The notes below the pieces were generated by a model. It was given only the letters and a program-made list of their open reading frames with translations, was not told where the DNA came from and made no database searches. Below are positions 7,030 through 26,718 of a stretch of DNA of 49,335 bases, in pieces. A program made the translations under genes and the position numbers. Within the stretch, counting starts at the first letter, position 1, and the number at the start of each line of letters is the position of its first letter. The DNA comes from Fonticula alba ATCC 38817 (taxonomy: Eukaryota; Protista; Nucleariida): the NCBI GenBank assembly GCA_000388065.2, contig KB932202.1. One strand, given 5' to 3'.

Positions 7030-9492
7030 TCATTGCGGCGAACGCTGGCCGGCGGCCGGCTGTGGGCGCCGGTGGCCGCCGCGGCCCGATGCATTGTCCC
7101 GGCCGGCGCGCTGGCCGCCGCCATGCTGGCCGCTGGCCGGAGCACCGGGCCGGCGGTCTTGCTGCTCACGCGTGGGCCTGTTTCTCTGCCCATCGGCCAG
7201 ATGCTTCTGCTGGTAGGCAGCGCGGTAGCGCAGGAACAGCTCCACCAGGACCACCGCATCGTTGACCGCGTAGTCCACCTGAGCAGGATGCATGTCCTCC
7301 TTCCAGAGGCTCCAGTCGGCCATGGTCCAAGAGCTGTCCAGCAGCACGCCAAAGCAGAATGCCACCATGCCCTTGAGACCTTTGAGGCCTTTCGAGTCGG
7401 AAATCCCTGGGAAGGGATGCCCCCAATCGCGCAAGGGGGCCGGCACGGTGTGCATGTGCCCGGCATACTCCGGCGGGATGTCCGCCGGATAGCCCCCCAA
7501 GCTGGGGCGGTGCTGTGTGCTGGGCTTTTTGTTGTCCGAAGGCTGCGTCGGATGGTCCGCCAAGTCGATGAAGGACGGCATGTCCCCAGGCATTTGGAGA
7601 TAGCTGGCCAGTGGGACCACATCGCTCGAGTAGTTGTAAACAAGGTTCACCCACGACCGGTGCTGGTCATGCACCGTGAGGTACTCCCGCAAGCAGGCAG
7701 TCGCCAAGTCCGGGTGCTTGGCCATGCTGAAGAGGAAGACCACCGAGCGCCGGAGTGCCGCGGCGACACCGTGCCAAGTCAGCCGGCCAAGCGCTTCGGC
7801 CGGCAGCGGCGTCAGGCACACCTGCACCAGTGCCGGCACCTTGGACTGGGCGTTCGGGATGGACTCGGTGTCGAGGGCCGAGATGCCTCCCTGGCGGTGG
7901 AGCATGGCGCAGAATGCCTCGGCCGCGGCAGGCGTATCGACCCACACGACCTGCACACCGGCCGGGCGCTCGTACATTGGGTACTCCGGGCCCGCGGTGG
8001 CGGCCACGGGGTGCGGTTCGATGCCGACCTGGCGGATGGCATAATGCAGCAAATTGATGCTTGCCAGGTTCGTGAATGCCACCGGCCGCCAGCCGACCGA
8101 GCGAAGGGGCTTGTAACTTTGGGACCAGACAGTGAGACTGAAGGAATCCCGCTGCAGTTTCTTCTTCATCTTCTCAATGTCCCAATAATCATTCATGAGG
8201 CCCAGCAGGGGGATGCCTGAGTAGGGTGCTTGTGTCTGTCAGCAATCGGTCACCGGTGTATGTATGTGCATGTGCATGTGCATGTGCGTGCGTGCGTGCG
8301 TGTGTCTTCTTCCGTGCCCATCCCCTCCCTCTGGTCGTCCATGTTTCTGTTTCACTCGGCAGGGCAGATGTGTCTCGCCGGGGCGGAGGATGCCGGTGAC
8401 CCGGCGAAGCGGCATGGCCTGGGCCCGGAGGCGGGGAACGCACAGCAACGAACAAAGTAGCTAGCACCCACGAAGAAAGGCATGAATGGCTCAATCGCAA
8501 GGGCATCGCGGATCACCATGTCGAGCTCGTCATCCAAGATGCCGGACACCTTATACTTGGCCATGTGCCTGTCAAAGGGCATCTCAAGCTCCTTGTCCAG
8601 GGCCATCAGCCGCGCGCCGAGCTCCCAGGCCGGGTTCTCGGCCAAGACGCCGAAGGACACCACCACCGCCGCCAGGGCCTGGGGCAGCGGCGAGAGGGGG
8701 GAGGGGCGGCGAAAGGCAAGGCGGCACAGCCGAAGGTCAGACCGCGCAAGCTTCCCACAAGCAGAGGGGCAAGGGAATAGGGGGGAATTTTTCGGCACCC
8801 AGGCGCCCCGGGAGCGTACTAGCATGTTGGCGCGATCGAAGCGCGAGTGTTGATCATAGCCACCAAAGAAGGCATTGAGGTCACTCTCCACAGGGACGGT
8901 CCCCTTGTTCATAAAGTCAAGGACTGGGTGACAGCGGGTGGCGATGGGCGGCCCCCTCGCAGGAAGTTAGCAAAGTGCGGGACAACGGCATACAGGGGGA
9001 TCTTACGGGCGCGGCCCTTGGAAATCGGCCCCGGCGCCTCCTCGAGTGGGGGTCACGACTGGAGGGCCGGCGGCGATGCCTGCCAGGGCCGAGCCCTTTT
9101 GCTCTCGCCCCCCCCACGTCCCCCCCCCCCCGCCTCCCGAAAGCGACGCACAAGAGCGGCCGCGACCCGGCGCAAACGCACCCATGGTGGCAACCTGTCC
9201 GTAAGAGGCCTTCTTGATCCGCTTGTCAGCGATGGTATACTGGGTGTAGAGGTAGTCCAGCAGCCTCTTCTTGGCGTGGGTGGTGGGAGTTCACGGGAAG
9301 ATGGATGACCGCTCTTCGGGCATGGTCACCCGGGAGCCCTCCTGGCTGGAGGCATGTTCGGCAGGCGAGAGAGTCTGCACATGGTGTGGCAGGGCAAGTC
9401 AGGCCAATGGCTGGGCGAAGGACAAGGGAGTAGGGCAGTTGACTCATGCTGCTGTCGGGGGTGGACAGCAGTCTGCCATTTCGACGGACCAT
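7030..9492 (-). CDS. Paralog A: DEDDy 3'-5' exonuclease (WRN-exo/Mut-7/EXD-like) with unknown N-terminal domain, about 538 aa, 5 exons (9490-9492, 9182-9269, 8820-8923, 8444-8678, 7030-8216)
   Basis: ExoI SALDTES, ExoII YNYSSD, GLKGMVAFCFG, ADW and ExoIII AQVDYAVNDA are all present. The GT-AG introns join into one open frame of 1617 nt. The exon 5 and exon 3/4 boundaries are firmer than exons 1-2. Confidence 0.88.
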
Positions 9493-10890
9493 GGGGTTTC
9501 GCTGATGTGGTGGAGGTTCTGGTAAAAAGGAGAGGGCGGGCGAAAGGCGGGGGTGACTGTGCGGCAGGCAGACCAGATGCCATCCAGGTGACTTTTATTT
9601 GTGTGCGAGGGGACCAGCGCTGGGACCGGCACTGGGGCCGGGGGCGGGGGGAAACGAATGTCGTCCGGCCAGCCTTGGGGTGGGGAGCCGCGCAGCTGGC
9701 CTGGGCATGCCGGCGGCGCCCTCTGCGGCGACCCAGACGCGCTTGCGGACCCGCAGGGCGTCGCCCCGCGCTTGCGGACCAATGCCAATGCGAGTTGGCC
9801 GCGCCGGCCCGGCCGGCCCCGCCCTAACACGGGCCGCCAACTTCGATGGGTCTTGGTGGAAGGACACGCACAGCGGCGTGCACCCTCCACCGGGGGAGAC
9901 CACCCCCGCCCCCTCGCCTTCTGTTCTGGCGGCCCTCCCGCGTCCGCCGGCAGGGCGAAGAGTGGCCCCAGGCCCACAGGGGCAAGTGTCGTTGCATCAT
10001 CTTCGACGGAAGGCCCGGCCACCACTCCCTGTGCTCCGGCGCAGGGGAAGCCTGCCCCTCGGGGGCGAGCCGCGCCGGGCGTGTTTTCAAATTGGCCTCA
10101 TCTGGTTCGTTGGGAGCACAGGCCCCGGGTGGCTCCCCGGGACGGGCGCGCCCGGCGTCCCGAGCCGGGTTCACGAGCGCCTCCGAATGGGGGGGCTCCA
10201 CAATGCCGGCGCAAGAAAGCGGGCGCCGTGCACGGCGGCAGCCAGGCGGCGGGGCCAGCCCGGCCAAAAGCTCGCCCCAGGTCGGGGCACGCCCGCCGGG
10301 GGAGCCCGGCTCGCCGGACACCACCCGGCCTCTGCGGAAGGCAGGACCACGGACACCGGAGAGGGCAGGTGCCGCGCCGCCGGGGAATCCTCGCGCCTGC
10401 TGCCCCTTGCGATGGCCGGGCGCGGCCGTCTGGGCCGGGCACCACGCGCCTGTGCGAGCGTCGCCCCTTCCCGGCGGGGGCCTGATGGCGGAGTCCCCCG
10501 TGTCGGGCGTGCCTCTCTATGCTGCGCCCTGCCCGGCACGGGGCACAGACCTGCACCCCTGGCCGCTCTCCGGCTCATGACGCACGGCCACCCGTGCCGC
10601 ACAGACCCCAGCGCTGTGGCAGTCCCTGCCTCAGGCCCGGAAGGGGAGGGGGCGTTACGCAAGCTTCACTTCGACCTCCCAGCCCAGGCCGCCCCCTCCC
10701 GCGCGCGCGCGCACACCGCTTTTGCCCACCGGCCGGATGGGGCGCCCCAAAAAAAAGGCCCGCCGCATGACCTGCAGCCACGCCAAGCCCTTGCCCTCCC
10801 CCGCTCCCCTGCCCCGGGCCTGCGCCCGCCTCGCTCCGTGGCCACGCAGGGCCGCCCACTGCTCCGGCTGCCAGCTCCTCCGCGCGTGCC

Positions 10891-10954
10891 GCACGCCCAG
10901 CCAAGGCCGACGCCCGGCCGCACGCCCAGCCAAGGCCGACGCCCGGCCGCACGC
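10891..10954. repeat. 29-bp tandem repeat, 2.2 copies (GCACGCCCAGCCAAGGCCGACGCCCGGCC)
   Basis: Direct reading; no spacers. Confidence 0.9.
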
Positions 10955-11026
10955 GCCTTCCCATCAGGCGGACGCGCACCAGGAAAGAGCAAAAGCCGAG
11001 GAATAAAAAGAGCAAGGGGGTCCCGT

Positions 11027-13611
11027 CTATTTCCCCAGGACCGGCTGCTGGGGAAGGACCACCGCCGCCGGGGGGGGCCGCTGGACCTCCGGCGGGTCGG
11101 CCGGGCCGGCCTCCAACCGGGCCGCCTCGCGGCCCAGCTGGTTGACCGACTCCAGCAGCGACTCGACCGCCAGCCGGGAGAAGGTGGTGGCCAGGTCCCT
11201 GGCCCCGATGCCGGTGGTCACCCCGACGGTCACCTTGAACACGGTGCCGATGGTCAGGCCGTCGGCCATCTTGACCGCCATGCTGGCGGCCATGTTGGTG
11301 GCCAGCCGGGCGGACATCTTGGCCGCCTGGCGCGACGCCTCGGCCCCGGACTCCTCGCCGGCCAGCTGCCCGGCCAGGGAGGCCGTCGTGTGCAGGGCCT
11401 CCCGCACGGACTTCTCGTCCAGCTTGCCGTCCAGCATCTTGTTGGCCATCTTGGTGGCCATCTTGGCCGTCATCTTGGTGGCCATGCGCCCGGCCATGCG
11501 GACCGCCGAATTGGCCGCCAGCTTGGTGGTCACCCGGGCCGCCTCGGAGGCCGCCTTCTTGCCCAGCAGCTTGGCCGTCTCGTCGACCGGCAACCCGGCC
11601 GCCAGCAGCTCCAGCGTGCTGGGCGAGGGGGCGACCGCGGCGCCATCCCCCGCGGCGGCCCGGGCATCCTCCCACTCGGAGTCGCTGGCCCAATCCGGCC
11701 CCCGGTCGATGGTGTCCCAGCCGAGGTCCCCGCCGAGGTCCCACTCGGAGTCGCTGTCGGACCCGCTGTCCGAGCAGCCGCCCCCGGCCCGGCCGGCCGG
11801 GTCCCGAAGCGCCGCCTGGAAGGCCGCCTGCACCGCCGCCTGCACCACATCCTGCGTGATGGACAGCGAGGCGCCGGCCAATTCGGCGTCCTCCTCGGCC
11901 TCGGCCTCCGGGGCGGCCAGTTCCTGCGTCGAGGCCGCCCGGCGAGCCGCCGCCTCGGTGGCCACCTGGGCCGCCGTGACCCCGGCCAGCATGCGCACCG
12001 CCACCTCGCGATCCCGCTCAAACAGGCACCCCATGTGCTCGTAGTAGAGGAAGAGCTCCACCAGGATGGCCGCATGCTCGAAGAGATCCGGCCCCCGGCC
12101 GGCCGACCGGAGGCCCGCGATCCACCCCCCCTCGAACCCCGGGCAAATCCGCACCAAGTCCGCCAGGCCGCGCCGGCCGCTCAGCGGCCCGGACACCTCG
12201 TGCTCGGCCCCGCTGCGGGCCTTCTTGCCGCCGAGCTCCGACCCCGGCGGCAGGGCCAGCTCGATGAGGCCCCCGTGCGCATGGTAATCCAGCGGATCCA
12301 CCGGCAGGTCGAAGATGTGGCTCCAGCTGTAGCACAGCCGGACATTGCCCCGGCACAGGCCGGCCTCGGCATAATTGCACAGGTAGAACCCCAGGCACTT
12401 GTAGGCCGTGGCGTCGCCCAGGTCAAACTCGAACACCTGGGTCTTGCGCAGGCTGGCCACCAGGCCGGCCGTGTCCGCCAGCGAGGAGGGCAGGTCGCCG
12501 CGCAGCGGGGTCACCGCCACCCGGGCCCGGACCGGGCCGCGGGCCTCTTCCCCCGGGCCCGGGGCCCGGCTCGAGGTGATGGCCGCCACGCAGTGCCCCT
12601 CCACGGCCATGCGCCGGAAGAGGCCCCTGCCTGCCTCGTTGTCCACATACACCAGCCCATTGGCCCCGAGCGTCAGGAACATCTGGTTGAACACCCGGCC
12701 GATGGGCACGTCGCCCGGCCGGCTGGCCGGCGGCGCCCGGGCCGTGCTGTCGTCCGCCCACTTGTCGATCTTCCGGCCGCTGCGCTGGCGCAAGTGGTCC
12801 AGGACATCTGTCACCGCGTGGGCCCGTGCAATGTGCGCCACCAAAAAAAGCGGGTCGCCGAGGTCAGTGCTGCTGCGCGCCAGGCCTTGGCCCGCCCCCG
12901 GTCACCAGGGCACAGCGCCCGACGCACGTTTGGTATGCAGCCGAATGTCATCGTCCTCCTGGTAGAGGCACAGAAAGCCCCGGAGCAGGCGGAAGGCGGT
13001 GGCGCTCGTGTCGGCCCCGGCCGGGTCGTCCTCCGCATTGGCAAAGTGCATGAGCAGTATCCCCAGAAGCCGGAGCACGCTGTCGCGCGGGTGCTCCTCG
13101 AAGTGGCACGGTGCGACGCCCCGGCGGTCGATCACAAAGTGCACGAGGATCTGGGCCCAGTGGCGGAGTGGTGGCCGGTGAGACGCCGAAGCTCGGGCAT
13201 GTCGCATGCCGCACATGCGCGGACCATGGGCAGGGGGGGGGGGGGAACACTCGGAGCGCACCAGCACCATGGTCTTGTCCATGACAGAGAGGTCCTTGAA
13301 GTGGGCGTGCTGCTGCTTGACAAAGTCCACCAGGTGGTCTTGCCCGCTGGCCGGGCCGGGCCAGGAGGCGAATGGCTGGATGTCATCGTCTGGACAGAGG
13401 GCGTCGGGGTCAGAGGGGCCGGGGCACAGGCGTCGCACGGGAGCGGCACGGCATCGACGCACAGACACTAGAGGCGAAGTCGAAGGATTTCTTCAGACGC
13501 CGCGAGTCGCCGGTGATGTCCGGCTTGGTGTTTGTTCGGGGGGGGGGGGGGGGCGGTTAGCAGGGCGGCGACGCCGTTGAAGGCGTGGGCAAAGCAAGGG
13601 GCCCCTACCAT
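11027..13611 (-). CDS. Paralog B: catalytically inactive 3'-5' exonuclease-fold protein with long C-terminal extension, about 731 aa, 5 exons (13609-13611, 13463-13523, 13262-13389, 12928-13150, 11027-12807)
   Basis: Aligns to A (YVDNEAGRGLF, RVAVTPL, SLRKTQVFEF, GLADLVRICPG, AAILVELFLYY), but ExoI reads AAITS and the ExoIII Y and D are lost. Intron phases match A; the spliced frame is open (2196 nt). Confidence 0.8.
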
Positions 13612-13756
13612 GGCTGCGACCGAGCGGGGAGGCCGCAGACGAGAGACGCAGAGACGGGGGAGAGAGAGAACGAAAAAAGCAAAAGCGGTGGGTGGGGTTG
13701 CTGGGGCCTCCTGGGCGCTGAGCTGGCCCGGCCGGCCGCCCAAAAATCCGCCCCCC

Positions 13757-13766
13757 NNNNNNNNNN
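13757..13766. other. Assembly gap (10 N)
   Basis: N run within a poly-C tract. Confidence 1.
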
Positions 13767-15167
13767 CCCAAAAACCCCCCCCCCCCCCCCCCCCTCGGGT
13801 GGCTGCCCGCGATCGGGCGCGGGCGTCGTCGGCGATCTCCCCTCCGCAGGCTGACCCCCTGGAAGGAGGGGTCGCTGTTGATTTGCCGGGCGGAGGGGGG
13901 GGCGACCGCGCCGCCGGCGGGCCACGGTCCTCGTCGAAGGGCATGGCCTCCCTTGCCCCCCCCGGGGGGGAGAGTCGGCAGGAGGGCCCCCCTTGCCCCC
14001 CACGCGAGCCGGTGGGCCCGAGTGCCCGGGCGATGCGCCGGCGAGCCGGGCCCACAAAAAGCCGGCCCCGCGTCGCGCGCATGTTCCCATGGCCCTCCCG
14101 CGCTCGGCCCCCGTCCCAGCTGCCAAGCCCGCGGGTCCCCCCGCGGGAACGCCCTGCTCCGATCGAAGGGCACCCGGCGCCACAAGAGGAAGGCCTGGCT
14201 GCCCGCCCGCGAGCAACACGGCACCCCCGCAAGGCCGGCAGCCCTCCGCATCGGGAAACCCGGGCCGCTTCCGGTCCAGGTGCCAACGGTGGTCATTCCG
14301 CCCTGGGGCGCGGCCGGCCTCGCTGGTGTGGCGTCTCCGGGCCCCCCGGCCCTGCCGCGTGCGGGCGCGACGCTTGTCTTCGATTCCGGGCGCCGCGAGA
14401 GCGGGAGAGATCGCAAGATGGCAAGGTTGACAGAGCGAAAGGGCACGAGGGATCCGGGCGCCCTGATCCGCGCCCAGATCGCACCTGGCAACCCTCCCCC
14501 CCCCAGAATTATGGACAGCCACCCGGTCCAGTGGCAAAGGCAGGCATGCAAAGAGCCTTGTCCTCGCCTGTGCCGCGTTTTTGCCAGAAAAGGCCCATGG
14601 GACAGCATGCGCGTCCCATCTGCGCATGGTACCCGCCCGCGTCGCGCGCAGGCCCCCTTTGGCCAGCGGACCCCCAGTAGCAACGTGGTGCTTGTGAATC
14701 CGCCCTCTCTACGACACGCCTCGCGGGCTGACCGTGCTCTGCACTGTCCTCGCGATTGAGGGCGACGCCGCCCCGCATGGGCCGGTGCAGCGCGCGGCCG
14801 GAGGCATTGACAAGCCGTCCGGCCAGCCCGCCCGGCGGCAAAAGTGCCCAGGACACCCGGCAAGCGAGACACCCTAGCCCGGGCGGGCTTGTCCCCGGTT
14901 GTCCTCACAAGGGAGCACTGACCGAGACTGCTCCGACGGCCAGGTGGCCCAGCCTCGAAGGCCATGCATCCGGAGGACCCTCCCCAGGGACTTCGCCAGC
15001 GGGTCATGCACGGGCCGGAGGGATGTTTCCTCAAGGCGTTCGGCCGTTCGCACGCAAGGCCGCCCCGGCATCGATCCTGCGCGTTGGACCCCCTCCCCCC
15101 CCTCCCCCCCCCCTCTGGACATGTGCTTTGGGGCATATGTTCGGAGCACAAGGAAAGAGTGACACTT

Positions 15168-15173
15168 TTTATT
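15168..15173 (-). promoter_or_regulatory. Candidate polyadenylation signal AATAAA for paralog C
   Basis: TTTATT on the + strand, about 150 nt downstream of the paralog C stop codon. Confidence 0.4.
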
Positions 15174-15322
15174 GGTCCCAAGAGACGGTGCACACATCGA
15201 ACTCATACAGGCCGGATTTCCTGGAGAAGAGGAGGCTGAGCGCGTCACACTCTATGCATAGACGTATGGGCACGCGCCCCTCCCCCCTCCGCCAGCTCCC
15301 TCTCTGGAGTCCGCATGGTCGC

Positions 15323-17678
15323 TCATTTATGCAAGGTGTACATGTGCAGCGAGTAGAGGAATAGCATGTTCCCCAGGAAAGCATACTCGGTCCAGTACCT
15401 TCTCTGTGCCGGGCTCTCCCGCCCATCGGCAGGCAGCACCAGCATGTTCGCCACCCTGGGAGCAACACACAGGCCGAGAGTTTCCTGGACCATGCCCTCG
15501 AATGGGCGCGTCTGATCCACGGAAAAGAGCCTGTGGTCACTGTCCGTCCGAGTGGCGGCCTCTTGGTCGGCGCTGGTAGGCGGCGCTGCAAGGTTGATTC
15601 CATATTTCTGGGTCGCCACCTGGAAGGCATCAAATAGTTCGAGCAGCTCGGACTTCTGGCCATAGTGGATCCGGGGGTTCTTTTTGGCCCCGGTGGCCTG
15701 GGTATTTTGCTGGTAGAGAATTTGCAGGGCTTCAAGGGTGAGTCTCGGGTGTGTGAGTGGCTCAAATTGGAAGACGCGCGTCTGACCCAGACTCCACATC
15801 ACCTTGGGGTAGGATTTCACCAAGGTCGAGAGGGGAAGCCCCCGAGGGGAGACACTGCCACGCGAATCACCCACACCGGGGTCGAGGCCGAGCCGTCGTC
15901 CGCTCCCGCGACGCCCCGGCGGTCGATCACAAAGTGCACGAGGATCTGGGCCCAGTGGCGGGGTGGTGGCCGGTGAGACGCCGAAGCTCGGGCATGNNNN
16001 NNNNNNNNNNNNNNNNNNNNNNNNNNNNNNNNNNNNNNNNNNNNNNNNNNNNNNNNNGGGGGGGGGGGGGGGGGGGGGGGGGAGGTATCGCGCCACATGG
16101 ATGAAAGAGACCACATGTTGCGACTCCACCTGCTGGATGAAGTCCATAAGGGCGACCTCTGTGTCGACCAAAATACCGGCCGCCGTCAGGCCATAGTGTT
16201 CGAGACTCGGCAGGTCGGCCGACAGGGCTGCTCGCTCGGGCGAAAGCACACTCTGGAGCACATTCAAGGCGCCCTCCACCATGTCCAAAGGTCGGCCATC
16301 GATCCACCACCCGAAGACGGGCATCTTCGCCAGCGTATTCTGAAGCATCTCGGTGTTGAGCGAGTTCAAGATTTCGTTGGCCCGGCTATGGACTGTGCCG
16401 CCCGGGCGAGGTTGTGGCATGCAAGACAGCGACGCATGCAAGTTAGTGGGACAGCACTGACAGCCGGTTCGCCCCCCCCGCTGGAGCCCGCGGGGAGGGA
16501 GCTGCGGGGCTTTGCCAGCCCGGACCGCCGCGCCTGCGCATCCTTTCCCAGGGCCGCTCGGTCATGGGCAGCGAGGGGCCAGTTGGTGGAGATTGCGGGA
16601 GGGGGGGGGGCGTTTGAGTGTTGCAAGGGGCCTGGCGGCGTGCAACCACCAGGCCGTGTGGGCTTCCCCCCCCCCCCCCCCCCCCCCCCCGGCGTCTCGT
16701 GTTGAGGGGGAGGGGAGAATCCTCACATGTACAAGGACAGCGGAGGGCGCACTTCGCCTGACATCCTGCCAGAGGTACAAAATTTCCGGCGGAAAGATAT
16801 TCATAAAGTGCAAGAGAGTGGCACAGGCGAATGCAGTGCGCATCCGATCCTCTGGACGGAGGGTTCCCCAAGCCTCATGATGGAGTTTCAACTTTCCGCT
16901 CAGCGTGGCGGCCAAGAGGCGGATGAACCGGATACAGGAGGCCTCGTGGAGTGAGGGGCTCAGCAATAGCCCCACCTTGGGCAAGAACCAGTACCGGCGG
17001 ATGGAAGGGTCGGGTTGGGCAAGCCAGAGGCGGGGTGTCAGTGGGTCGGTCGCATCGCGAGGCCGGCATCATCTTTTATCCATGTAAGAGCGCGCCCGAG
17101 CAAGGACCACGCGCTTCGAGGTCACTGTTTGTTCTGGGTTGTACCAATACACTGGCTTGGCCAAGCACATTGTTGATGACGGCGCTGTAGAAGTAGTCCA
17201 CGCCTCCGTGGTGCTGGTAGATGTTGACGGTAGCGGCCTGGACTGTTTGATGTGTATATTTGTGAAAGCGAAAGAGGGGGCAGGCGAGGGGCAACGGGTC
17301 AGCATGTTTCCGGTTAGATGCTCGAGCTGGGGATCAAGAACAGAAGGCATGGCATTGTGGGGCCGGGCAATCTCGGCGCGCGCGTACTACTTGGGGCCAG
17401 GCGCGGGTAAAGAGCGTGTATGTCCAAATCCACGGGATTGATGCCAACACACAGAAGCCCATGTCCAGGGTTCGTGGCGGCCGGCAATTCATTTTGCGGC
17501 TGTGCAAGGAGAGTAGTCTTGAATGTGGCGGCGGCCGGCCGTGGTGCCGACATGACGAAGTGGGGTCAGCCAATCGGATCGCAAGCATCTTTTACGGGAG
17601 AGAGAGAGAGAGACGCCCCCCCCCTCCTCCCCCTTAGACCCGACAGACCAAAAGCGCACGTACGGGGGGCGTTGTCAT
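15323..17678 (-). CDS. Paralog C: inactive exonuclease-fold protein, 5 exons (17664-17678, 17388-17517, 17145-17242, 16753-16975, 15323-16392); last exon has a gap, an 89-bp foreign insert and a 1-nt frameshift
   Basis: Motifs LVDTEVALMDF, IRVAVSPL, SLGQTRVFQF, FEGMVQETLGL and SPAQRRY align to A and B. ExoI reads SFIHVA. Intron phases are 0,1,0,1. Exon 4 is 223 nt, the same length as in B. Confidence 0.72.
15908..15996. repeat. 89-bp copy of 13113-13201 (paralog B intron 3/exon 4 junction), one mismatch, next to an N gap
   Basis: Direct comparison of the two segments. Confidence 0.92.
15997..16057. other. Assembly gap (61 N)
   Basis: N run next to a poly-G tract. Confidence 1.
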
Positions 17679-17967
17679 GGTTGTCACTTGTTGTACGGGT
17701 GCCGGATGTTTTGGGGATATCCGTGCGGGGCAAAGGAAAAGGGGCCACGGGGTGAGGGCGGCGTCAGGCAGGTAGAAGAGGGGAGACGAGCGGGGCTGAT
17801 GTATCGAAGGGGGTGTGCTCTAGTGGAAAGAGCAATGGCCGCTTGAAGGGCCCCGTCCCCTCTCAAGTTCCCCCTCTGGGCCGCCCGAGAGTCGTCACAT
17901 CACCAGGAAGACACACCCCGGCGAGGCATCTACTGGGAGACATGACAAGGATGAGGGGAAACAATGA

Positions 17968-18363: not shown

Positions 18364-18408
<45 letters not shown>

Positions 18409-18417: not shown

Positions 18418-20330
18418 ACCAGGGCTTGTGGGTTCCTGCGGTCGAGAGACGAGCAAAAGTACACCCAGGGAGGGGCATTTCCTTGGCGGAGGGGGGGGGG
18501 GGGTAGGGGGGGCTGATCAAGCGGGCGAACATGGGTTGGTCCCAATGTGATGAAATTGCTAGCACCCTGTGCCGGCAGGGGGGCCCCCTTTTCCCCGGTC
18601 ATTCTCGACCTTTCTGGCGAACGCTCTCCTGGGGCCATCGCCACCACCGGTTGTGGCTCACCTGTCTGGTCGGAGGCCGAGCTCTTTTCTCCTACACCCG
18701 GCCAACTGCACCGCAAGGATTCCCGATCTCAATCCCCAGGCGGGTGCGACCATATCCTGGGCCGTCCCTCGAAGCTGTGCAGGCCCCAACAGACACACAC
18801 GGGTCCCTGATGGACAGATGATTCGCTCAAAAGGGGATTTATATCCTTCCTGCTCGTCGACTCCCTGCCGCCTGAATCGGGGGTCGCCCTCGATAGAGGA
18901 GTGAGAGAGCTGTTGCCCAGCCGCGGGGCCTGCCAACAGAAGCCTGGTCCGCCTGTGCTTGCGGGCTCCTTGCTTCTGGGACGCCCAGGGCACTGGCCGG
19001 CCATTACTGGCCCCGTCACCACTCCCTGCCCCGGGGGAAACGAGGGATGCTTCTACCAGTGTGCCATTCTCACAACTGCACCCCGGAGCGTGTCCTCCCC
19101 CCCCCCTGGGGACTACGGCGCGCCATCCGAGGTCACACCCCTCCTGGCCTGCAGGGTACTCCGTGTGGGTGCATATGTGTCGCTCCGTACATGAGCGCCT
19201 GCAAAAAGAGCGCCCGTATGAGCTGCATACGTGTGTTTGAGTCGATTCGCGTATGGTGAACGCACCCATTTTCACGCCTTTGTCCGATGCCTCGCAGGTA
19301 CCCTTTGGCGCGACCAGAATGGGAGCAGCTTCTCTCGGAGAAACTGCCCGCCGACGTCTGCCTAAGGCACAACTCGACCAGTCGACATTCTACCTTGAGG
19401 ACTCTGCCGGTACAGCGCTAGTAGGCACTCGATTGTCCTCCCCCGCGCTCCCCCCCCCCCCCCCCCCTGCCCATCGATCACCCGTCCGCTGGCATGGTCA
19501 ACATACCCCAGCGGACCCGGCCACGCCCGGAAGGGTGAGCGGTAGAAGAACGGCCCGACGAGACCAGGCGCGGTCCGGAACCAGCGTGTGTCATTAAGAT
19601 CTCTGGCCGGCAGCCCCACGTCGCCTACACCCTCCCTGACCCAGTGGAGATGCTCTGCCGGGCCGAGAGCTCCGAGAGCCAGACCGCCTGCCGCCCCCCT
19701 TCCCCCCTCCCCCCTCCCCTGGGCGCCCGCACCCAATCCCCATCCGCCCGGGCTGCCTGAGCCCACCAGGGCCACGCACAGCCCACAGAGGATACAAGCA
19801 AGCGGCCGTTCTTCATCCATGAGAGGCGACCGAAGGCAGGCCAATGCAACCAGCCTCCAAGGCCAGCAAGTAGCCAGCGCACAACCGATCGGCCAAACTA
19901 CTTGAGTCTCTCTCCGCGTCCCCACGCGCAGACTCCAAAGTGCCAATGATCCTGCGAGCATGGTATCCTTCGTTCACCAAGCCCACAGTCTTATCTCGAG
20001 ATTAAACCCACGCATGTGGCCCTCACAGAGGGGAGCGCGTGGCCAATTTTCAAGCCTCCCTAGCCCCACCACCCCGCCAGATGAGCCAACGTTTCGAAGA
20101 ATGGCATGACAGGGCACACGAAAGAGAAAGGAGAAGGTGGAGCGGTTGCCCGAAAGGGTGGGGTGTGCATATTTTTCGTGCCCCCATCTTAAGGCCCGGA
20201 ATGGCATGGCGGCGCGCCGCCTGCCAAGCATCGCCCTATCAACCCCTTTCCTCTGCCAGCGGCAGCCGCCTCCACACACACCTCGTCGCTGGGCACACAG
20301 AATGAACCCCCTTGCCTGGGAGGGCCTGAA

Positions 20331-20332
<2 letters not shown>

Positions 20333-20362
<30 letters not shown>
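20333..20362. repeat. (GT)15 microsatellite
   Basis: Direct reading. Confidence 0.95.
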
Positions 20363-20363
<1 letters not shown>

Positions 20364-21075: not shown

Positions 21076-23059
21076 TCACTTGCAAATGGCCATCTGGGAG
21101 TGACAAACCAGGGCCAGGCACATGAGTAGTTGCTCCTTGATGGCCTGCTCACGGTTGAGTGCTTCATCGATGTCCCCAGCTGCGGCCATGTCCAGGCCGA
21201 TGTTCCACCGGGCAAGGTGGGCCACAGAACGCTCGCCCGAATGGCCCATCACCGAATGTGAGTCGTACGCCCGCGGGAAGGCCGTCCGGCCGCTCGGCTC
21301 TCGGGACAGGTCCACCGTGTTGAAGAGGTCGGCGCGCCTCTTGCCCGGGCTGCTACCTTCCACTATGATGTGGGGGAGTGGGACCCCGTGGACGAGAGCG
21401 CACACCTCCTCCAACAGCGAAGCTTGCCTGGCACCGTGGATAACGCGTGTGTTGTTGGGCACACCGGACTGGGTCTTCCTCGGGAGGATCTCCCTCACTA
21501 TCGGCCAGGACTCGGGCAGCTTCAGGTCGAGGGTGATCTTGAACAGGCGCATGGTGGCCTGCTCGATGCCCTCCGGGCCAACGGCCGTGATGTAGTCCGC
21601 GAAGGCGTGCGGCATGTCCCACATGGCCATGTAAAGATCCGCCCGGGAGATTGTCCCATCTTCTGCCCGGACTACGTTATCGATGAAGAGCGAAATGAGC
21701 TCGAAGTCCATCACAACAAAGCGCGACAGCTGCTTGGTGCCGGGTAAATCCCACGCGTTCAGGCACTCAAATTCAATGCCGGCCCCGATGGAACCGGCCC
21801 CGGCCGCGGAGGTCTCCTCCTTCGACGGCACCGGCTTCGGCGCCAGCAGCAACAGCTGCACCAAGTCCGCAAGGTATCCTTCGTAGTTGTGCCCCGAGGG
21901 ATCCACCAGGAACCCGTGTTTCTCCGGCTCGTCCAGCAGGCTGGACATGTTGCTGACGAAGCCTTCGGTCGGGTCTCCCGCGCGTTCCACGTCTACCGGG
22001 GGGGGGGGGGGGGGAGGAGGAGGGGTGTTAGCGAGCAGGACCGCATGGTTGGCCGGGTCGCAGGCCATGTGTCTGGCGGCTCAAGAGGCCTATTAGAGGA
22101 GGAAGCCTGCCCCCGGCATGTGGTATGTCCAGCTCCTCCCCCGACAAGTCAAGGCAGGACGCGCACACTTCTTTACAAACGATCGCATCCTGGGCGACTT
22201 CAGCATCGGGACCAAGGGGCCCAGCAGGGCGAGAGACGCCTGTGCCTGAGTATGGCGGTCGCTCCTGCACGAGAAATACTCATTGAGACACAGCGCGTTC
22301 TTGATGATGAGCTTGTGGGCCAAGATCTCCAGGGGGAGCCCCGTGGCAAGCAGCCCCTTCTCGGACAAAAATCGCAGCATGACCTGCAGGTCAAGTGTCC
22401 GGCGGCAAGAGGACCCCTCGCGTCAGCAACTCCCGGGACATGTTGGAACCAGAGGCAAAGAGGCCATCCCCCCCCCCTCCCCCGCTCTGAATTCTCTGGG
22501 ACATACCAGAGCATTGGCCTGGGCCACAGGGCAAAGATGTCGAAGGTTCTCGGTGATAGTCGCGGCATCGAGCTGGCTAAGGGAATCGCTCAAAGCACCA
22601 CCCAGGGACACTGCAAGTGGCGATGTCGCGCCGAGACGGAAGCCCATGCATGCACAGGTACCCGCGCAAATACAGACGCAAGATACCCCCACCCGGAGCA
22701 TGACAGATCCCATGGTCCAAGGCACCGGGCGTTGGGGGACACACACCAGCCCCGCAAGATGAGCACATTCAACCGCAAGACGCCAGGTTAGATGATATCC
22801 CCCCGGGGAACAAGGCCAGGGGGTGGCGACACATGCGCGACATACACTTCCCATCGAACGGCACAAGAGTCGAAGAACAGCGCGGGATCGCCCCGCCGAC
22901 ATGGTAGAATACCATGGCCAAGCCGGGGGCGCACCTGCGGAGGCCAATTTCGTCCGAAGCTTGAATAGTCTGCTGTCAGGGTTAGCATATGCCTTTGGGC
23001 CGAAGACTCCATGGCACCCATGGTACATCCCAGCCCCCAGACTCCAGCGCACGTACCAT
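21076..23059 (-). CDS. Paralog D: inactive exonuclease-fold protein, about 455 aa, 5 exons (23057-23059, 22846-22972, 22507-22610, 22167-22383, 21076-21992)
   Basis: ATG|GTACGT first exon. Exon 3 is 104 nt as in A and ends AQANAL|. Motifs ISRADLY (ExoI Glu lost), RVIHGARQASLLE, TVDLS and SVAHLARWNIGL. The spliced frame is open (1368 nt). Confidence 0.78.
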
Positions 23060-23667
23060 GCTAAAAGAGGACGGCTCGATTCCTGCCACAAGACTGCACC
23101 GGGGAAGTGAAGAAAGAGGAGAAAAGGAAATACACACACGCGTATGTGTGGGGGAGAGGGAGAATTGTAGAGCGAAGGGGCGGAGGTGAAAAGAGGGAGG
23201 GAGAGGGGGGAAAGGAACCAGGAAGGCTCTTTTCTGGCAAGGCCCCAGGCCACTACCAATTTTGGCCCATCTCCATCAGGCTCTAGCGCCCACCCCGCCG
23301 GCCCTGGCCGTCCGCATGGCGGCCCCATTCTCTGCCAGTACCCAGTCGCCGCCGAGCTCCCACGTTGAGGGATCTTGGTGTCGTGCGGCGACCCGATTCC
23401 CTAGGTCGCGCGCTTCCCTCTGCCTGCACGGGCACGTCCATTTCACCGGGCCCGAGCCGGGCACCCTCGATCATACCCGGGTTGAGTGCGTCCACACCTT
23501 TTTCGGCCTAGCCATATATTTGGCCCAACTCAATTGCGTCATCATTCGGTGCCCCTGTGTTGCGAGGGCCTGGAGCGGGGGGTAGCCGCTCCGAATGGAT
23601 ACACAAACACCGGCCGACGGAGCCCTGGTAAGCAAGTGCCCACGGCGTGAGGCCAGGGCTCCGGCTC

Positions 23668-24200
23668 TCAACAGGGGCCGATGTTCCAAGGCCTGCACCT
23701 TGGAAGGACATGCATTTGGAAGGGTGCTTCTCCTTTCGGCCGCACCAGCCAAGCCGAGCCCCATCCGCTGGGGTCAGCAGTCGGGAACACAAGCAGGGCA
23801 GGGTGCGCTAATCCGCAACAGCCTCGGCTCCGAAGCACCACGGTCCGCTGGTCGGCCCCTTGGCCAAGACCTGGCGTTTGGTGCTTCCAAGACCCGAAAG
23901 CAGACACCTCGGCCGCGGGGCGGCGGGTGTGGAGCCGCGCCCGATCTCCACCAGCCCATGCCCTAAAGTCTCCCGTGCAACCACGAGGAGCTCATGGGAC
24001 ATTTCGCACGCTGCCTTTTGTACATCATGCAGCGAATAATGTCGCCCACCATGCGCTGGGGCGGGATCAGGACAGATGCCCTCGCCCGCAGCCCCCCTGC
24101 CCCGGATCCCAGGCCCCGCTCGATGGTGGTGCCTCGGCACAAAAAATCCTGCAAATATGCCGGCTGGTGGGATACATTCAGAAGAGTAAAGGGAAATAAA
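23668..24200 (-). pseudogene. Possible decayed exonuclease-family paralog
   Basis: SHELLVVARETLGHGLVEIG resembles the ExoII and 'IDL' regions. In another frame DQRT..GL..LLVFPTAD..APFQ resembles paralog C DQTR..GL..MLVLPAD..SPAQ. Frameshifted. Confidence 0.3.
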
Positions 24201-24663
24201 AACATGGGAATAAGCGAAGAAGAAAAGAAGGGGGAAACAATGCGCCGACAAAAGAGGCGCGAAACAAAGGCAACACGACAGCTGGACGCAAAAAAGTGAG
24301 CAAGCCCAGAAATGGGGCACAGCCTTGATAGGCTGAGGGAGATGGAGGGGAGGGGGCGCGGTAAACCGCCGAAGACATCACGTATCAGCCAGACGCTTGA
24401 CCTGCGTCCCAGGATTTGACCACGCATCCCTCCGGGCATCAAGCAGCCAGAAGGGGAGGGGGGGGGCACAGGCGAGACGGGGAGAGCAAGATGGCCACGG
24501 TTGGCGCGGAATGGTTGACCTGAGAGCCAGGGAGCTGCCCACTACTGACAAAGAACCCCTTGATTCGGGGCGAGACAGCATCAGACGGTAATAGTGGGAC
24601 ACTTTTTCATCCAGTGGGGATCTTCCTGCCAGGCTGTGATAGCTTGGGCATATCCAAATCTAA

Positions 24664-26718
24664 CTAAGTGGCAATGGACTGATCCGAAGTAGAAGTGGTT
24701 TTGGCCTCGGTTTTACACTTGTCACAAAGAATAGCAGTCTCAGAAGAAGAAGAAGAAGAAGGAGGAGGATTGGGAGGGTTTGGCGGGAGCAAATACAAGT
24801 AAAGAATGGCCATGATCCGCTCGATGCTGCCTTGAGCGACATCCCAATCATCCTCACACAGCAACTTGGACTCATGGAGGTTTTCGTTCGCCAGATCCAT
24901 GCGGAAGTTATCGTCGACTAGCTTCCGCAAGTTGTGTCTACCTGGTGGAGGGTTTTTCCCCTCTGGCTCATTATTGGGTTTCAAACCAATGTCGACGATT
25001 TTGTCCGTAGAGCATCGGTTTTCCAGAATACTCAACTGTTTACGCAGACCGTCAATCAGATCATCTTGATTAAAGATGACCAGCTTGCTGAATGATTCGT
25101 TGTATCGACGAGAAGCCAGCAACTTAGTCATACAATCCGAGGCATTCTTTGAATCAGTGGATTTGAAATTGAACTCGAACAGAGAAGCTTCCTGCAGAGC
25201 TTGGACCTTCTCATATGCCTCAATTTTGTCAGATGGAATATTGACAATGGCAACTCGAGCATATGCTACCATCTCCTCTTCAGCTGCCTTGACAAGTTCC
25301 AAAGAAGCCACATAGCGCTGCTGGATGATCTTGTCGAAGTCCTTCCTGGCACACTCATCAGAAATATCCCGCACTTTGGGAAGGACCTTCGGCCGAGAGG
25401 GGTAGAGGAAGTGATGCTCGGCCAAATACTTGACATTGCGCAGGCCATGACAAAACAATGAGTCTCCCTCCTCTGTCTTCCGGAAGGTCACACCACACCT
25501 CTCTTTGGTCAAGATGAGAGAAACAAGCTTGTCCTCCACATCCTCGATCTTGGGTCCCTCGCTCCACACGCCCATGCTCCAGGAGGTGGTTGGGTCCGTC
25601 TTGAGGTTGTTCACACAACGGAGCAGCCCAGCTTCATCCGGCAGGTAAATTTCTTTCGTCATGGATTGAATGGAAGCCCCACCATGGTTAGAACGGTGGC
25701 CAATAGAAAGAGGCGCAGCGGTGGAAAATGACGCACCTTTCGGCCAAGTATTGAGGGGCTTTCCCGACCCAGAGGTCCCAGCCGTGGCTTGGGCGGGCTG
25801 AGGGAGGTGCTTAACGGTGTAGTGAGTGGTATCAAGGAAGGGCGCAACCGTGTACAGGGCAAAGTAGATGGCCTGCATCTCGAAGGGGCGGACGCCCTTT
25901 TCAAGAATGGATAGCATATCCTGGACGAAATCAACAACGGCCAGCTTGTATCCCAGAAATCTGTTGACCAAATCTTTGTCGTCTTTGAGGAAGATGTGGA
26001 CCATGGCCTGGGCGAGTCACGGAAGCATGTCAGTGGCTGATATGATGTCGAAACTTGATGCGGGCCGCATTAAGCGATGTCGAAATGGCCGCCGATGAGA
26101 CTGGATAAAAACACACCAGGACGTTTGCCCTGCGAATCGGATCGAAGTTATGTGACATTTTGTAAAGCTCAATAAGCTTTGGCCGATTCTTGTCATCCTT
26201 CTTGACTACTTGGAGGGCGGGGGGCATTCCCACAAGTGTGTAAAGGGGATGCACAAAAATTAGCCATAGCAGAATACGTAGCACGGCAGGCACGGTGCCA
26301 TTTATCGTATGGTCCATTGTGCAAGGCGACGGAAGCATGAATACATATGTTCTTACGTGTTAGAGCGGCAACAAATTGTCAAGAGCCAGAATAGAGCAGG
26401 TTGAAAAGGCTTGGCACTCAACCCGGGCGATAGCAAACCATGCGGAGGGCCACCACAGGAGAAGGCCACTTTCGGACGTACGTCTGTCAAGGATCTCTTT
26501 ATAATACTCTTTCTCCTCAGCTCGTGCAATCACCACCCCAAGGGAGTAGAGGGTGAGACTTTCACTTTTGACAAATAGCGGGGCGCCTGTGGGCCCAGTC
26601 TAGGCGGGGAGTAAATGCCGTTCGTTAGGGGCTTGGGCAGTTGCAGAGCCATTTATGAAAGGCAGCGAGGATCAGCCATGTCCGACTCATAGAAAGGGGA
26701 GACCAGTGTTTGTACCAT
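24664..26718 (-). CDS. Paralog E: inactive exonuclease-fold protein, about 490 aa, 5 exons (26716-26718, 26482-26599, 26117-26208, 25737-26007, 24664-25652)
   Basis: Exon 3 ends IRRANVL| (A: FDRANML|). Motifs ARVAIVNIP, ALQEASLFEF, IVDIG and NLRKLVDDNF. ExoI reads ASLELV. Intron phases are 0,1,0,1; the spliced frame is open (1473 nt). Confidence 0.8.

What the first reader, a model, noticed from the sequence alone, without database searches (positions are those of the whole stretch)
7030..26718. Hidden tandem array of five highly diverged 3'-5' exonuclease-family genes
Five minus-strand genes (A 7030-9492, B 11027-13611, C 15323-17678, D 21076-23059, E 24664-26718) look unrelated in the ORF track. 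Once spliced they share the same exon and phase pattern and the same ordered motifs. Seen: VWVD/YVD/LVD/VMD/ISD before ExoI; QVCLTPL/RVAVTPL/RVAVSPL/RVAIVNI; ALRRSVVFLF/SLRKTQVFEF/SLGQTRVFQF/ALQEASLFEF; IDL/IEL/INL/VDL/VDI; GLKGMVAFCFG/GLADLVRICPG/FEGMVQETLG/SVAHLARWNIG/NLRKLVDDNF. Established: these motifs follow the DnaQ-like DEDDy fold of WRN-exo/Mut-7/Nibbler/EXD proteins. Inference: a lineage-specific, fast-evolving locus; extreme protein divergence with intact gene structure suggests a conflict-driven role such as small-RNA or transposon defence. I do not recognise this family as described.
Basis: partly seen in the sequence, partly recalled or inferred. Interest (0 to 1): 0.9.

Follow-up and report, generated by a model that had tools for sequence, protein, structure and literature searches.

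The report
Exonuclease gene array with dead copies
In the amoeba Fonticula alba, five neighbouring genes descend from one 3'-5' exonuclease gene: one copy keeps its catalytic residues and four expressed copies have lost them, a family not detected outside this species but an ordinary kind of gene-family evolution.

Summary
The window is Fonticula alba scaffold KB932202. The five minus-strand genes are H696_01335 (A), 01336 (B), 01337 (C), 01339 (D) and 01340 (E).

**Shared structure.** All five end with three introns of phase 1, 0, 1, flanking an exon of 89-128 nt and one of 217-271 nt, followed by a long terminal exon. RNA contigs show this for B and C; the annotation shows it for A, D and E.

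**Common descent.** The 20 residues around the phase-0 intron are the best-matching window of each whole protein (rank 1 of 411-477 for D and E).

**Exonuclease domain.**
- A and two unlinked paralogues keep all five DEDDy catalytic residues, with borderline Pfam PF01612 scores.
- B and C are statistically demonstrable relatives of A that lack the ExoI acidic pair.
- E is supported weakly by sequence and moderately by a predicted fold.
- D's C-terminal half could not be tied to the fold.

**Assembly.**
- Gap 1 is upstream of B's coding sequence and is bridged.
- Gap 2, inside C, is not bridged.
- The 89 nt beside gap 2 are a 99% copy of part of B.
- A 2-nt assembly indel at 15832 explains C's apparent frame change.

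**Novelty.** No relatives beyond a generic ExoIII motif were found in 1.84 billion representative proteins. The "conflict or small-RNA defence" idea is untested. The scan noted this same stretch before (s1-065553), not on other DNA.

The parts
7030..9185 (-). Gene A (H696_01335, 509 aa). Annotated CDS exons 9182-9185, 8820-8923, 8444-8678, 7030-8216. This is the catalytically intact member.
   Evidence: 100% match to P0001. Exons mapped. The 4-nt first exon and the true start are unverified.
7225..7962 (-). Exonuclease domain of A. ExoI D-T-E at 7864-7872, ExoII N-Y-S-S-D at 7621-7635, ExoIII Y-A-V-N-D at 7258-7272.
   Evidence: Coordinates checked. Motifs align with the PF01612 proteins P0007 and P0008. 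Pfam and PDB hits cover the ExoIII part.
11027..13611 (-). Gene B (H696_01336, 731 aa). CDS exons 13609-13611, 13463-13523, 13262-13389, 12928-13150, 11027-12807. The exonuclease-like core lies at about 11960-12661, followed by a roughly 310-aa low-complexity tail.
   Evidence: Four GT-AG introns seen in RNA contigs of two samples. The spliced CDS gives 731 aa, as annotated. Related to A at z = 10. The catalytic positions read T, S, I, H and a gap.
13757..13766 (.). Assembly gap 1, inside a poly-C run upstream of B's start codon.
   Evidence: An independent DNA contig (run X4) joins 13750 to 13785. The gap is outside any CDS.
15323..17678 (-). Gene C (H696_01337). RNA-supported exons are 17664-17678 (coding part), 17388-17517, 17145-17242, 16753-16975, and a terminal exon running from 16392 down to the stop at 15323-15325. 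The terminal exon is interrupted by gap 2.
   Evidence: Joints in RNA contigs of two samples. Translation. HMM of A, A2 and B against C gives 24 bits. The annotated 398-aa model is contradicted: its 3' intron at 15236-15470 is contiguous in the RNA contigs.
15997..16057 (.). Assembly gap 2, inside C's terminal exon and next to a poly-C/G run (16058-16083). Continuity and reading frame across it are not established.
   Evidence: RNA and DNA contigs stop at 15892-15908 on one side and start at 16094 on the other. The B-C alignment runs collinearly across the gap if the 89-nt piece is left out.
15908..15996 (.). An 89-nt piece abutting gap 2. It is a 99% copy of B 13113-13201, which is the acceptor end of B's phase-0 intron plus the first 38 nt of B's exon 4.
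   Evidence: the repeat finder family D1. It is not collinear with B's domain order, and no contig enters it from C's unique flank. It is either an assembly artefact or an ectopic conversion; this is unresolved.
15832..15833 (.). Two surplus bases in the assembly that shift C's reading frame.
   Evidence: Left out in both RNA contigs and in the one DNA contig that spans the place. Removing them gives one open frame of 192 codons from 15907 to the stop.
21076..22915 (-). Gene D (H696_01339, 435 aa). CDS exons 22846-22915, 22507-22610, 22167-22383, 21076-21992.
   Evidence: P0004. This is the only GT-AG solution that gives 435 aa. It has the same 104-nt exon and 1-0-1 phases as A and A3. Junction motif is rank 1 of 415 windows. 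The C-terminal domain is unassigned.
24664..26718 (-). Gene E (H696_01340, 489 aa). CDS exons 26716-26718, 26482-26599, 26117-26205, 25737-26007, 24664-25652. The exonuclease-like domain lies at about 24790-25374.
   Evidence: P0003. Weak HMM hit and a collinear alignment to A. AlphaFold model and fold searches.

Best explanation
A 3'-5' exonuclease gene of the DnaQ-like DEDDy superfamily, carrying a lineage-specific N-terminal region, was duplicated repeatedly in tandem in Fonticula alba.

**Shown**
- Copy A and two unlinked copies (A2 = H696_06053 and A3 = P0005) keep the metal-binding and catalytic residues D, E, D, Y, D. They are presumably active exonucleases.
- Copies B, C and E have diverged to below 25% identity and have lost the ExoI acidic pair and most other catalytic residues.
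- All four degenerate copies, D included, remain intact, codon-biased genes, and RNA libraries hold their sequence. Splicing is shown directly for B and C.
- All five genes share common ancestry. B and C belong to the exonuclease family.

**Probable**
- E keeps an exonuclease-like fold.
- D's C-terminal half is either exonuclease-derived but diverged beyond recognition, or replaced.

**Inferred**
- B-E act as pseudo-nucleases, keeping the fold for nucleic-acid binding or for pairing with the active copy.
For: **Identity of the genes**
- The genes match annotated Fonticula alba proteins.

**Gene structure**
- Phases 1-0-1 with exons of 89-128 nt and 217-271 nt occur in A, B, C, D, E and A3. A2 has lost the phase-0 intron (345 = 104 + 241 nt).

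**Intron-anchored motif**
- The motif [RQ]AN.L | hydrophobic sits at the phase-0 intron. It is rank 1 of all windows in each protein, at every window size tested, for D and E against A, B and C.

**Sequence statistics**
- Smith-Waterman z: A-B 10, A2-B 8.4, B-C 7.7.
- HMM of A, A2 and B against C: 24 bits. HMM of B and C against A: 20 bits.
- E scores above all 300-500 shuffles.
- Adding E to the B+C profile raises A's score to 35.4 bits, against a maximum of 24.4 with shuffled E.
- The A-E local alignment is collinear.

**Catalytic residues**

**Fold of E**
- AlphaFold pTM 0.55, with beta-alpha-beta-beta-alpha-beta-alpha order.
- The matches that cover most of the model are Pol nu and Pol theta exonuclease-like domains, EXD2, EXD1, Nibbler, WRN, RNase D, Rrp6 and Egalitarian.

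**Expression and coding signal**
- RNA contigs are spliced for B and C. The intergenic stretch 13900-15100 has zero RNA depth.
- RNA runs hold 0.64-0.70 of the sampled words of the D+E stretch.
- GC3 > GC1 > GC2 in all five genes.

**Precedent**
- EXD1 is an inactive DEDD nuclease that acts as an RNA adaptor (PMC4712191).
Against: **D**
- D's C-terminal half gives no signal by HMM, profile improvement, hhalign or AlphaFold.
- Its best local match to A is off-diagonal, so it is chance.

**E**
- Sequence support is weak: 5-6 bits.
- Adding E helps the profile for A but not for A2 or A3.
- The model is only moderately confident (pLDDT 58.8) and was built from an alignment containing A and A2, so it is not fully independent.
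- Structural Z scores of 4-6.4 are in the range the tool calls unspecific.

**A and the family**
- A scores just under Pfam's cut-off, and only the ExoIII part matches known profiles.
- No activity, binding or interaction was tested.

**Gene models**
- C cannot be read across gap 2.
- The junctions of A, D and E rest on the annotation only.
Confidence: 0.7

Rival explanations
1. D is a chimera, and E less probably so. It keeps the family's 5' exons, but its C-terminal half is an unrelated or de novo sequence, not a diverged exonuclease domain.
For: Every test of D's C-terminal half is negative. Only the junction motif and the exon pattern tie D to the family.
Against: - D's terminal exon starts at the same phase-1 intron and has a similar length (917 nt) to the others.
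- The low-confidence model has an alternating beta/alpha order.
- The language-model search also fails on B, which is a proven relative, so negative results carry little weight.
Confidence: 0.2
2. B-E are decaying pseudogenes, relics of duplication without function, that merely happen to be transcribed.
For: They have lost the catalytic residues, are extremely diverged, and have no detectable homologues elsewhere. Long open frames arise easily in DNA of 65-70% G+C.
Against: - All four keep uninterrupted multi-exon reading frames of 435-731 codons with canonical GT-AG sites and conserved phases.
- E does so at only 50% G+C.
- GC3 > GC1 > GC2 in every copy.
- B and C are correctly spliced in RNA from two samples.
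- Divergence to below 20% identity without a single stop or frameshift is not expected of neutral decay. C's apparent frameshift is an assembly error.
Confidence: 0.08
3. The array is a fast-evolving conflict locus for small-RNA, transposon or pathogen defence, in which positive selection drives the divergence.
For: - The family is lineage-restricted.
- Divergence between neighbouring copies is extreme.
- There is a patch of about 92% identity between A2 and A3 and a 99% patch between B and C, as in gene families that exchange sequence.
- Related DEDDy proteins (Mut-7, Nibbler, EXD1) act in small-RNA pathways. This rests on established knowledge and on PMC4712191.
Against: - Nothing here measures selection.
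- No specific similarity to Mut-7, Nibbler or EXD proteins exceeds that to Pol I, RNase D or NrnC.
- Loss of catalytic residues followed by relaxed constraint explains fast divergence equally well.
Confidence: 0.12
4. The resemblance is chance or an artefact of annotation, and the five genes are unrelated.
For: Most pairwise comparisons involving D and E are not significant. Pfam finds nothing in B-E.
Against: The A-B-C statistics, identical intron phases in six genes, and the junction motif at rank 1 in all five proteins.
Confidence: 0.02

Closest known systems
DEDDy 3'-5' exonucleases of Pfam PF01612 (DNA_pol_A_exo1): Pol I proofreading domain, RNase D, Rrp6, WRN-exo, Mut-7/Nibbler, EXD2, NrnC
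   Same: - A, A2 and A3 carry ExoI D-x-E, ExoII N-x3-D and ExoIII Y-x3-D in the canonical order.
- The ExoIII region matches Pfam (23.1, 23.8 and 17.3 bits) and seven PDB DEDDy proteins.
   Different: - Only the last third of the domain is recognisable by profiles.
- A 55-110-residue insertion precedes ExoIII.
- The N-terminal region of about 115-300 residues, with its conserved intron motif, has no known relative.
- No orthologue was found outside Fonticula alba.
- No subfamily can be assigned.
EXD1, an inactive DEDD nuclease that acts as an RNA adaptor in the PIWI-EXD1-TDRD12 complex (PMC4712191)
   Same: B, C and E look like DEDD-type domains that have lost the catalytic residues, as EXD1 has. 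EXD1 is among the structural matches of the E model (Z 4.3).
   Different: - There is no Lsm domain and no sequence similarity to EXD1.
- There is no evidence of orthology.
- RNA binding or complex formation is not tested.
- Here the dead copies sit in tandem beside their active parent.
Vestigial exonuclease-like domains of DNA polymerases nu and theta, and the exonuclease-like domain of Egalitarian
   Same: These are the best structural matches of the E model that cover most of it: Pol nu 194-423 at Z 6.4, Pol theta at 5.0, Egalitarian at 4.3. They are DEDD folds without activity.
   Different: Those are domains of larger, conserved proteins. The Z scores are too low to claim more than a shared fold.
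Repeated evolution of inactive pseudonucleases in the fungal Dis3/RNase II family (PMC8097288)
   Same: The evolutionary pattern is the same: duplication of an exonuclease, then loss of catalytic residues and retention as a presumably RNA-binding protein.
   Different: That is a different fold and family (RNase II/RNB). I saw only the title and the start of the abstract.

Membership tests
DEDDy exonuclease (Pfam PF01612, DnaQ-like) | Profile score at or above Pfam's gathering cut-off (23.6 bits) | tested here: inconclusive
   A scores 23.1 (just under), A2 23.8 (passes) and A3 17.3, each on the ExoIII part only. B, C, D and E have no hit.
DEDDy exonuclease (Pfam PF01612, DnaQ-like) | ExoI motif D-x-E (two metal ligands) | tested here: met
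   Met in A (D230, E232), A2 and A3. These align with D-C-E of the PF01612 protein P0008. Not met in B (T, S), C (H, A) or E (E, V). D lacks the pair under either alignment.
DEDDy exonuclease (Pfam PF01612, DnaQ-like) | ExoII aspartate | tested here: met
   A has D313; A2 and A3 also have D. E keeps D358 and C has E353. B has I303, with a D two residues further on. D has a gap at this position.
DEDDy exonuclease (Pfam PF01612, DnaQ-like) | ExoIII motif Y-x3-D | tested here: met
   A has Y430 and D434, inside the stretch aligned by HMMER to Pol I and the diDNase ancestor. A2 and A3 are the same. C keeps only the Y. B, D and E have neither.
DEDDy exonuclease (Pfam PF01612, DnaQ-like) | RNase H-like DEDD fold | tested here: inconclusive
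   - E model: pLDDT 58.8, pTM 0.55. DEDD domains dominate the matches that cover most of the model, but Z is at most 6.4 and Foldseek E at best 0.013.
- D model: pLDDT 40.6, unusable.
For B and C the fold is inferred from homology to A.
DEDDy exonuclease (Pfam PF01612, DnaQ-like) | 3'-5' exonuclease activity | not testable with these tools
   This needs an assay of the recombinant protein.
   The profile of A+A2 against PDB ranks Pol I, the diDNase ancestor, NrnC and RNase D above the mut-7 homologue (E 0.25). All hits are weak and limited to ExoIII.
Pseudo-nuclease of the EXD1 kind | DEDD-type domain with catalytic residues lost, still expressed | tested here: met
   Met for B and C: homology to A, residues lost, spliced RNA. 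Probable for E. Open for D.
Pseudo-nuclease of the EXD1 kind | Orthology to EXD1 (N-terminal Lsm domain, TDRD12 partner) | tested here: not met
   No Pfam domain is found in the N-terminal regions, and no sequence hit to EXD1 appears in any search.

The most novel reading that the evidence does not exclude
The array encodes a lineage-specific nuclease system. One active DEDDy exonuclease (A) works with four fast-evolving catalytically dead paralogues, which act as substrate-selecting or regulatory subunits. They might form mixed oligomers, as DEDDy domains often oligomerise, and serve nucleic-acid surveillance or defence. The family's private N-terminal region would mediate assembly.
Probability: 0.15. 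Interest if true: 0.6.

Novelty: new variant of a known kind. Interest (0 to 1): 0.35.

Why it matters
- **Annotation.** It assigns four "hypothetical proteins" of Fonticula alba to a family. B and C are placed by sequence, E probably, and D by gene structure only.
- **Method.** It shows that conserved intron phase plus an intron-anchored motif can recover homology where sequence and structure prediction fail.
- **Biology.** It gives a compact natural example of an enzyme sitting next to a graded series of its own pseudo-enzyme descendants. Fonticula belongs to the sister lineage of fungi (established knowledge). If the dead copies prove to be partners of the active one, it would be a new case of pseudo-nuclease adaptors outside animals.
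- **Limits.** Otherwise this is an ordinary lineage-specific expansion.
- **Assembly.** The work also flags concrete errors in the reference: a 2-nt indel, a doubtful 89-nt piece at a gap, and a wrong model for H696_01337.

Tried and rejected
- **Splice-model enumeration.** Blind enumeration of GT-AG models to recover the annotated proteins was too slow without motif filters. It gave no solution for B under the strict splice-motif filter and seven candidate models for C, and 61,142 solutions for B once the filter was relaxed. It gave a single solution only for D. B and C were solved from RNA contigs instead.
- **Pairwise BLAST.** BLASTP and TBLASTN support only A-B.
- **Global alignment of exons 2 and 3.** These peptides are not significant beyond the junction motif.
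- **hhalign.** Single sequences against the family profile gave nothing for D and only a short off-diagonal hit for E. hhalign shuffle controls were too slow.
- **ESM Atlas searches.** D and E were uninformative. A control with B, a proven relative, also failed, so these negatives carry no weight.
- **AlphaFold on D.** pLDDT 40.6, and its Foldseek matches are meaningless.
- **Further copies.** A family HMM against all open frames of the window and of the A2/A3 loci found none. The A2/A3 locus holds no pseudo-nuclease array.
No homology to the N-termini of A2 or A3 was found upstream of 9185.
- **Literature.** The two papers that mention both Fonticula alba and exonuclease have unrelated titles and abstracts. 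I opened one, and it names the species only as a data source.


Full report
**Source and genes.** The largest open frame of gene A is 100% identical to Fonticula alba H696_01335, a 509-aa protein that UniRef names "3'-5' exonuclease domain-containing protein". The window is scaffold KB932202.1 at about 1.42-1.46 Mb, reversed.
- A at 7030-9185 (509 aa).
- B at 11027-13611 (731 aa).
- C at 15169-17678 (398 aa).
- D at 21076-22915 (435 aa, P0004 = H696_01339).
- E at 24664-26718 (489 aa, P0003 = H696_01340).
- A small 203-aa call lies between C and D.

All are on the minus strand. None of B-E has a Pfam domain.

**The gaps, tested first.** One read-laying run placed two RNA runs and two DNA runs on 11900-17899.
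- Gap 1 (13757-13766) lies in a poly-C run upstream of B's start codon. A contig of an independent DNA run joins 13750 to 13785. It is therefore a homopolymer-length uncertainty outside coding sequence.
- Gap 2 (15997-16057) lies inside C's terminal exon, beside a 26-nt poly-G/C run. No contig crosses it. RNA and DNA contigs end at 15892-15908 on one side and begin at 16094 on the other. Continuity and frame across gap 2 are therefore not established.
- The 89 nt that abut gap 2 (15908-15996) are a 99% copy of B 13113-13201. In B this is the 3' end of the phase-0 intron plus the first 38 nt of the next exon.
  - The piece is out of order relative to B's domain layout.
  - No contig enters it from C's unique flank.
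  - It is either an assembly artefact or an ectopic conversion; I cannot decide which.
  - If it is left out, B and C align collinearly across the gap with only a short proline-rich insertion.
- At 15832, both RNA contigs and the one DNA contig that spans the place lack two bases present in the assembly. Removing them merges the frame holding "RVAVSPL" with the frame holding "SLGQTRVFQF" into one open frame of 192 codons ending at 15323.

**Gene structure.** RNA contigs from two samples give four GT-AG introns in B. The resulting CDS exons measure 3, 61, 128, 223 and 1781 nt and encode 731 aa, as annotated. In C they give four introns and CDS exons of 15, 130, 98 and 223 nt plus a terminal exon. 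C's RNA model contradicts the annotated 398-aa model.

Mapping the annotated proteins gives these exon sizes:

| Gene | CDS exon sizes (nt) |
|---|---|
| A | 4, 104, 235, 1187 |
| D | 70, 104, 217, 917 |
| E | 3, 118, 89, 271, 989 |

D's model is the only GT-AG solution of the annotated length. In all five genes the last three introns have phases 1, 0, 1. The same holds for paralogue A3 elsewhere in the genome (541, 104, 244, 1232 nt). In A2 the phase-0 intron is simply missing, since 345 = 104 + 241. The junctions of A, D and E rest on the annotation; I could not lay reads on them.

**Are all five related?** In the exonuclease-like half, the evidence is graded.
- Smith-Waterman scores against 200 shuffles give z = 10 for A-B, 8.4 for A2-B and 7.7 for B-C.
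- An HMM of A, A2 and B finds C at 24 bits (E 6.5e-7). An HMM of B and C finds A at 20 bits.
- E scores only 5-6 bits, but this is above all 300-500 shuffles.
- E's local alignment to A (A 231-346 against E 278-395) is collinear with the domain.
- Adding E to the B+C profile lifts A from 20 to 35 bits, against at most 24 with shuffled E. It does not help A2 or A3.
- D gives nothing in any of these tests. Its best local match to A is off-diagonal.

An independent test uses the intron as an anchor. I took the 20 residues around the phase-0 intron:

| Gene | Residues around the phase-0 intron |
|---|---|
| A | DRANML\|ALAAV |
| B | DKTMVL\|ILVHF |
| C | GQASVL\|VGLLL |
| D | AQANAL\|VMLRF |
| E | RRANVL\|AMVHI |

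I scored each window against the anchored windows of the other genes and compared it with every other window of the same protein. The anchored window ranks first in all five proteins. For D and E against A, B and C only, it ranks first of 411-477 windows at half-widths 6, 8, 10 and 12. A2 and A3 have their best match to this motif at the corresponding place, and in A3 the intron is there too.

Together with the tandem, same-strand arrangement, I regard common descent of all five genes as well supported. What is unproven is that D's C-terminal half is still an exonuclease-type domain.

**What the family is.**
- A, A2 and A3 carry ExoI D-T-E, ExoII N/x-x3-D and ExoIII Y-A-V-N-D. In an alignment with two PF01612 proteins from the library search these fall in the canonical columns.
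- Pfam PF01612 scores 23.1 bits for A, 23.8 for A2 and 17.3 for A3, against a cut-off of 23.6. Each hit covers only the ExoIII third of the model.
- A profile of A+A2 against PDB sequences returns seven hits, all DEDDy exonucleases: Pol I, diDNase/NrnC, RNase D and a mut-7 homologue. E-values are 0.013-0.95 and the hits again cover ExoIII only.
- A full HMMER scan of 1.84 billion representative proteins finds A, A2 and A3. Beyond those it finds only three weak hits (E 9e-5 to 5e-4) to ordinary PF01612 proteins.

The family is therefore a very divergent DEDDy branch not detected outside Fonticula, with a private N-terminal region. No subfamily (WRN, Mut-7, Nibbler, EXD) can be claimed.

**Catalytic residues in B-E.** At the five catalytic columns the alignment gives:

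| Gene | ExoI D | ExoI E | ExoII D | ExoIII Y | ExoIII D |
|---|---|---|---|---|---|
| B | T | S | I | H | gap |
| C | H | A | E | Y | Y |
| E | E | V | D | gap | gap |

D, whose alignment is uncertain, lacks the ExoI pair under either alignment. None of the four can bind the two metal ions in the canonical way. This agrees with the scan's other note on this stretch (s1-065553).

**Structure.** Only two prediction jobs were available. I used them on the two doubtful domains, each with a seven-row family alignment.
- D's domain gave pLDDT 40.6 and pTM 0.28, which is unusable. Its Foldseek hits are meaningless.
- E's domain gave pLDDT 58.8 and pTM 0.55, with the beta-alpha-beta-beta-alpha-beta-alpha-beta-alpha order of the fold.
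- Foldseek ranks T. brucei RNase D, Pol nu and EXD2 first for E, at E 0.013-0.1 with none at or below 0.001.
- VIA-align gives Z 6.4 to the exonuclease-like domain of Pol nu, about 5 to that of Pol theta, and 4-4.5 to EXD2, EXD1, Nibbler, RNase D and WRN-exo.
- A search of 48,161 chains that does not rely on Foldseek puts a phage Pol I exonuclease domain, Pol nu and Rrp6 at ranks 1-3. Egalitarian, WRN, RNase D, PARN and Nibbler follow.

DEDD domains, active and vestigial, recur among the top-ranked chains. But the Z values are in the range the tool calls unspecific, and the input alignment contained A and A2. I count this as moderate support for E.

**Real genes or relics?**
- B and C are transcribed and correctly spliced in two RNA samples. 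The intergenic stretch 13900-15100 has zero RNA depth, so the RNA libraries are not contaminated with DNA.
- The same RNA runs hold 0.64-0.70 of the sampled words of the D+E stretch. That is more than either gene alone could supply.
- All five show GC3 > GC1 > GC2. GC3 ranges from 0.59 in E to 0.93 in B.
- All keep open multi-exon frames, E at only 50% G+C.

This favours functional pseudo-enzymes over decaying pseudogenes. No selection test is possible without orthologues.

**Mechanism.**
- Shown: descent by tandem duplication, retention of the catalytic residues in A only, and intact, codon-biased coding sequences for B-E that RNA libraries hold, with splicing shown directly for B and C.
- Inferred: A is an active metal-dependent 3'-5' exonuclease. 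B-E keep the fold as non-catalytic nucleic-acid-binding or partner proteins, as shown experimentally for EXD1 (PMC4712191). Pseudo-nucleases have also arisen repeatedly in the fungal Dis3 family (PMC8097288, title and abstract).

**Verdict.** This is a real, lineage-specific family expansion with pseudo-enzyme copies. It is a divergent variant of a known kind and of moderate interest.

Noticed in passing
window 11027-11960 (minus strand; C-terminal ~310 aa of gene B): B carries a long low-complexity tail that the other copies lack. It has an acidic Ser/Asp-rich stretch, then repeats of the type A-K-M-A/T-x-K-M (for example 'RMAGRMATKMTAKMATKMANKM') that look like amphipathic helices. RNA contigs extend beyond the laid stretch to about B's stop codon, so the tail appears transcribed. 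The only Pfam hint is a sub-threshold bacteriocin-IIc match (14 bits).
   Followed up: partly
L004:10001-12615 and L002:10001-12099 (scaffold KB932217.1): Two further catalytically intact family members, A3 (P0005, 706 aa) and A2 (P0002, 603 aa), lie about 10 kb apart on the same strand. They are 46% identical overall but share a patch of about 95 residues at about 92% identity (A2 342-434). This suggests gene conversion between them.
   Followed up: partly
window 24664-26718 compared with 11027-13611: Base composition differs strongly along the array. CDS G+C is 0.64 for A, 0.71 for B, 0.57 for C, 0.61 for D and 0.50 for E. GC3 runs from 0.93 in B to 0.59 in E, in a window that averages 0.69. 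The cause is unknown; expression level, age or local mutation bias are possibilities.
   Followed up: no
window 25653-25736: The last annotated intron of E is 84 nt long, a multiple of three, and has no stop codon in frame, since the open frame 24664-26004 runs through it. Retention would simply add 28 residues. Whether it is spliced was not checked.
   Followed up: no
window 25120-25202 (E residues 166-193): Near the start of its terminal exon, E has a stretch 'LLRCVNNLKTDPTTSWSMGVWSEG'. It resembles the segment just before ExoIII in A3 and A ('VVHCFGLRLDDTWTMGNWSAG'; local score 45; hhalign E 0.02). It lies out of order relative to the domain. It may instead correspond to A's 'DSFSLTVWSQS' at the collinear place. 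Unexplained.
   Followed up: partly
window 18658-19269 (minus strand): The annotation places a 203-aa gene (by locus-tag order, presumably H696_01338) between C and D. It has no Pfam hit and no similarity to the family HMM. Its translation looks like a GC-rich chance frame. It may not be a gene.
   Followed up: no
window 9599-13471 (plus strand) and many others: Very long antisense open frames (up to 1290 codons) overlap genes A and B. They are a by-product of about 70% G+C and should not be read as genes.
   Followed up: no
window 14179, 14929, 15003: A DNA run from 2025 labelled as another organism (X4) matches 11900-13246 without any difference. It shows three single-base differences in the B-C intergenic region, so a second, nearly identical isolate or strain exists in public data. 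A soil metagenome run (X10) also holds 47% of the sampled words of the stretch.
   Followed up: no
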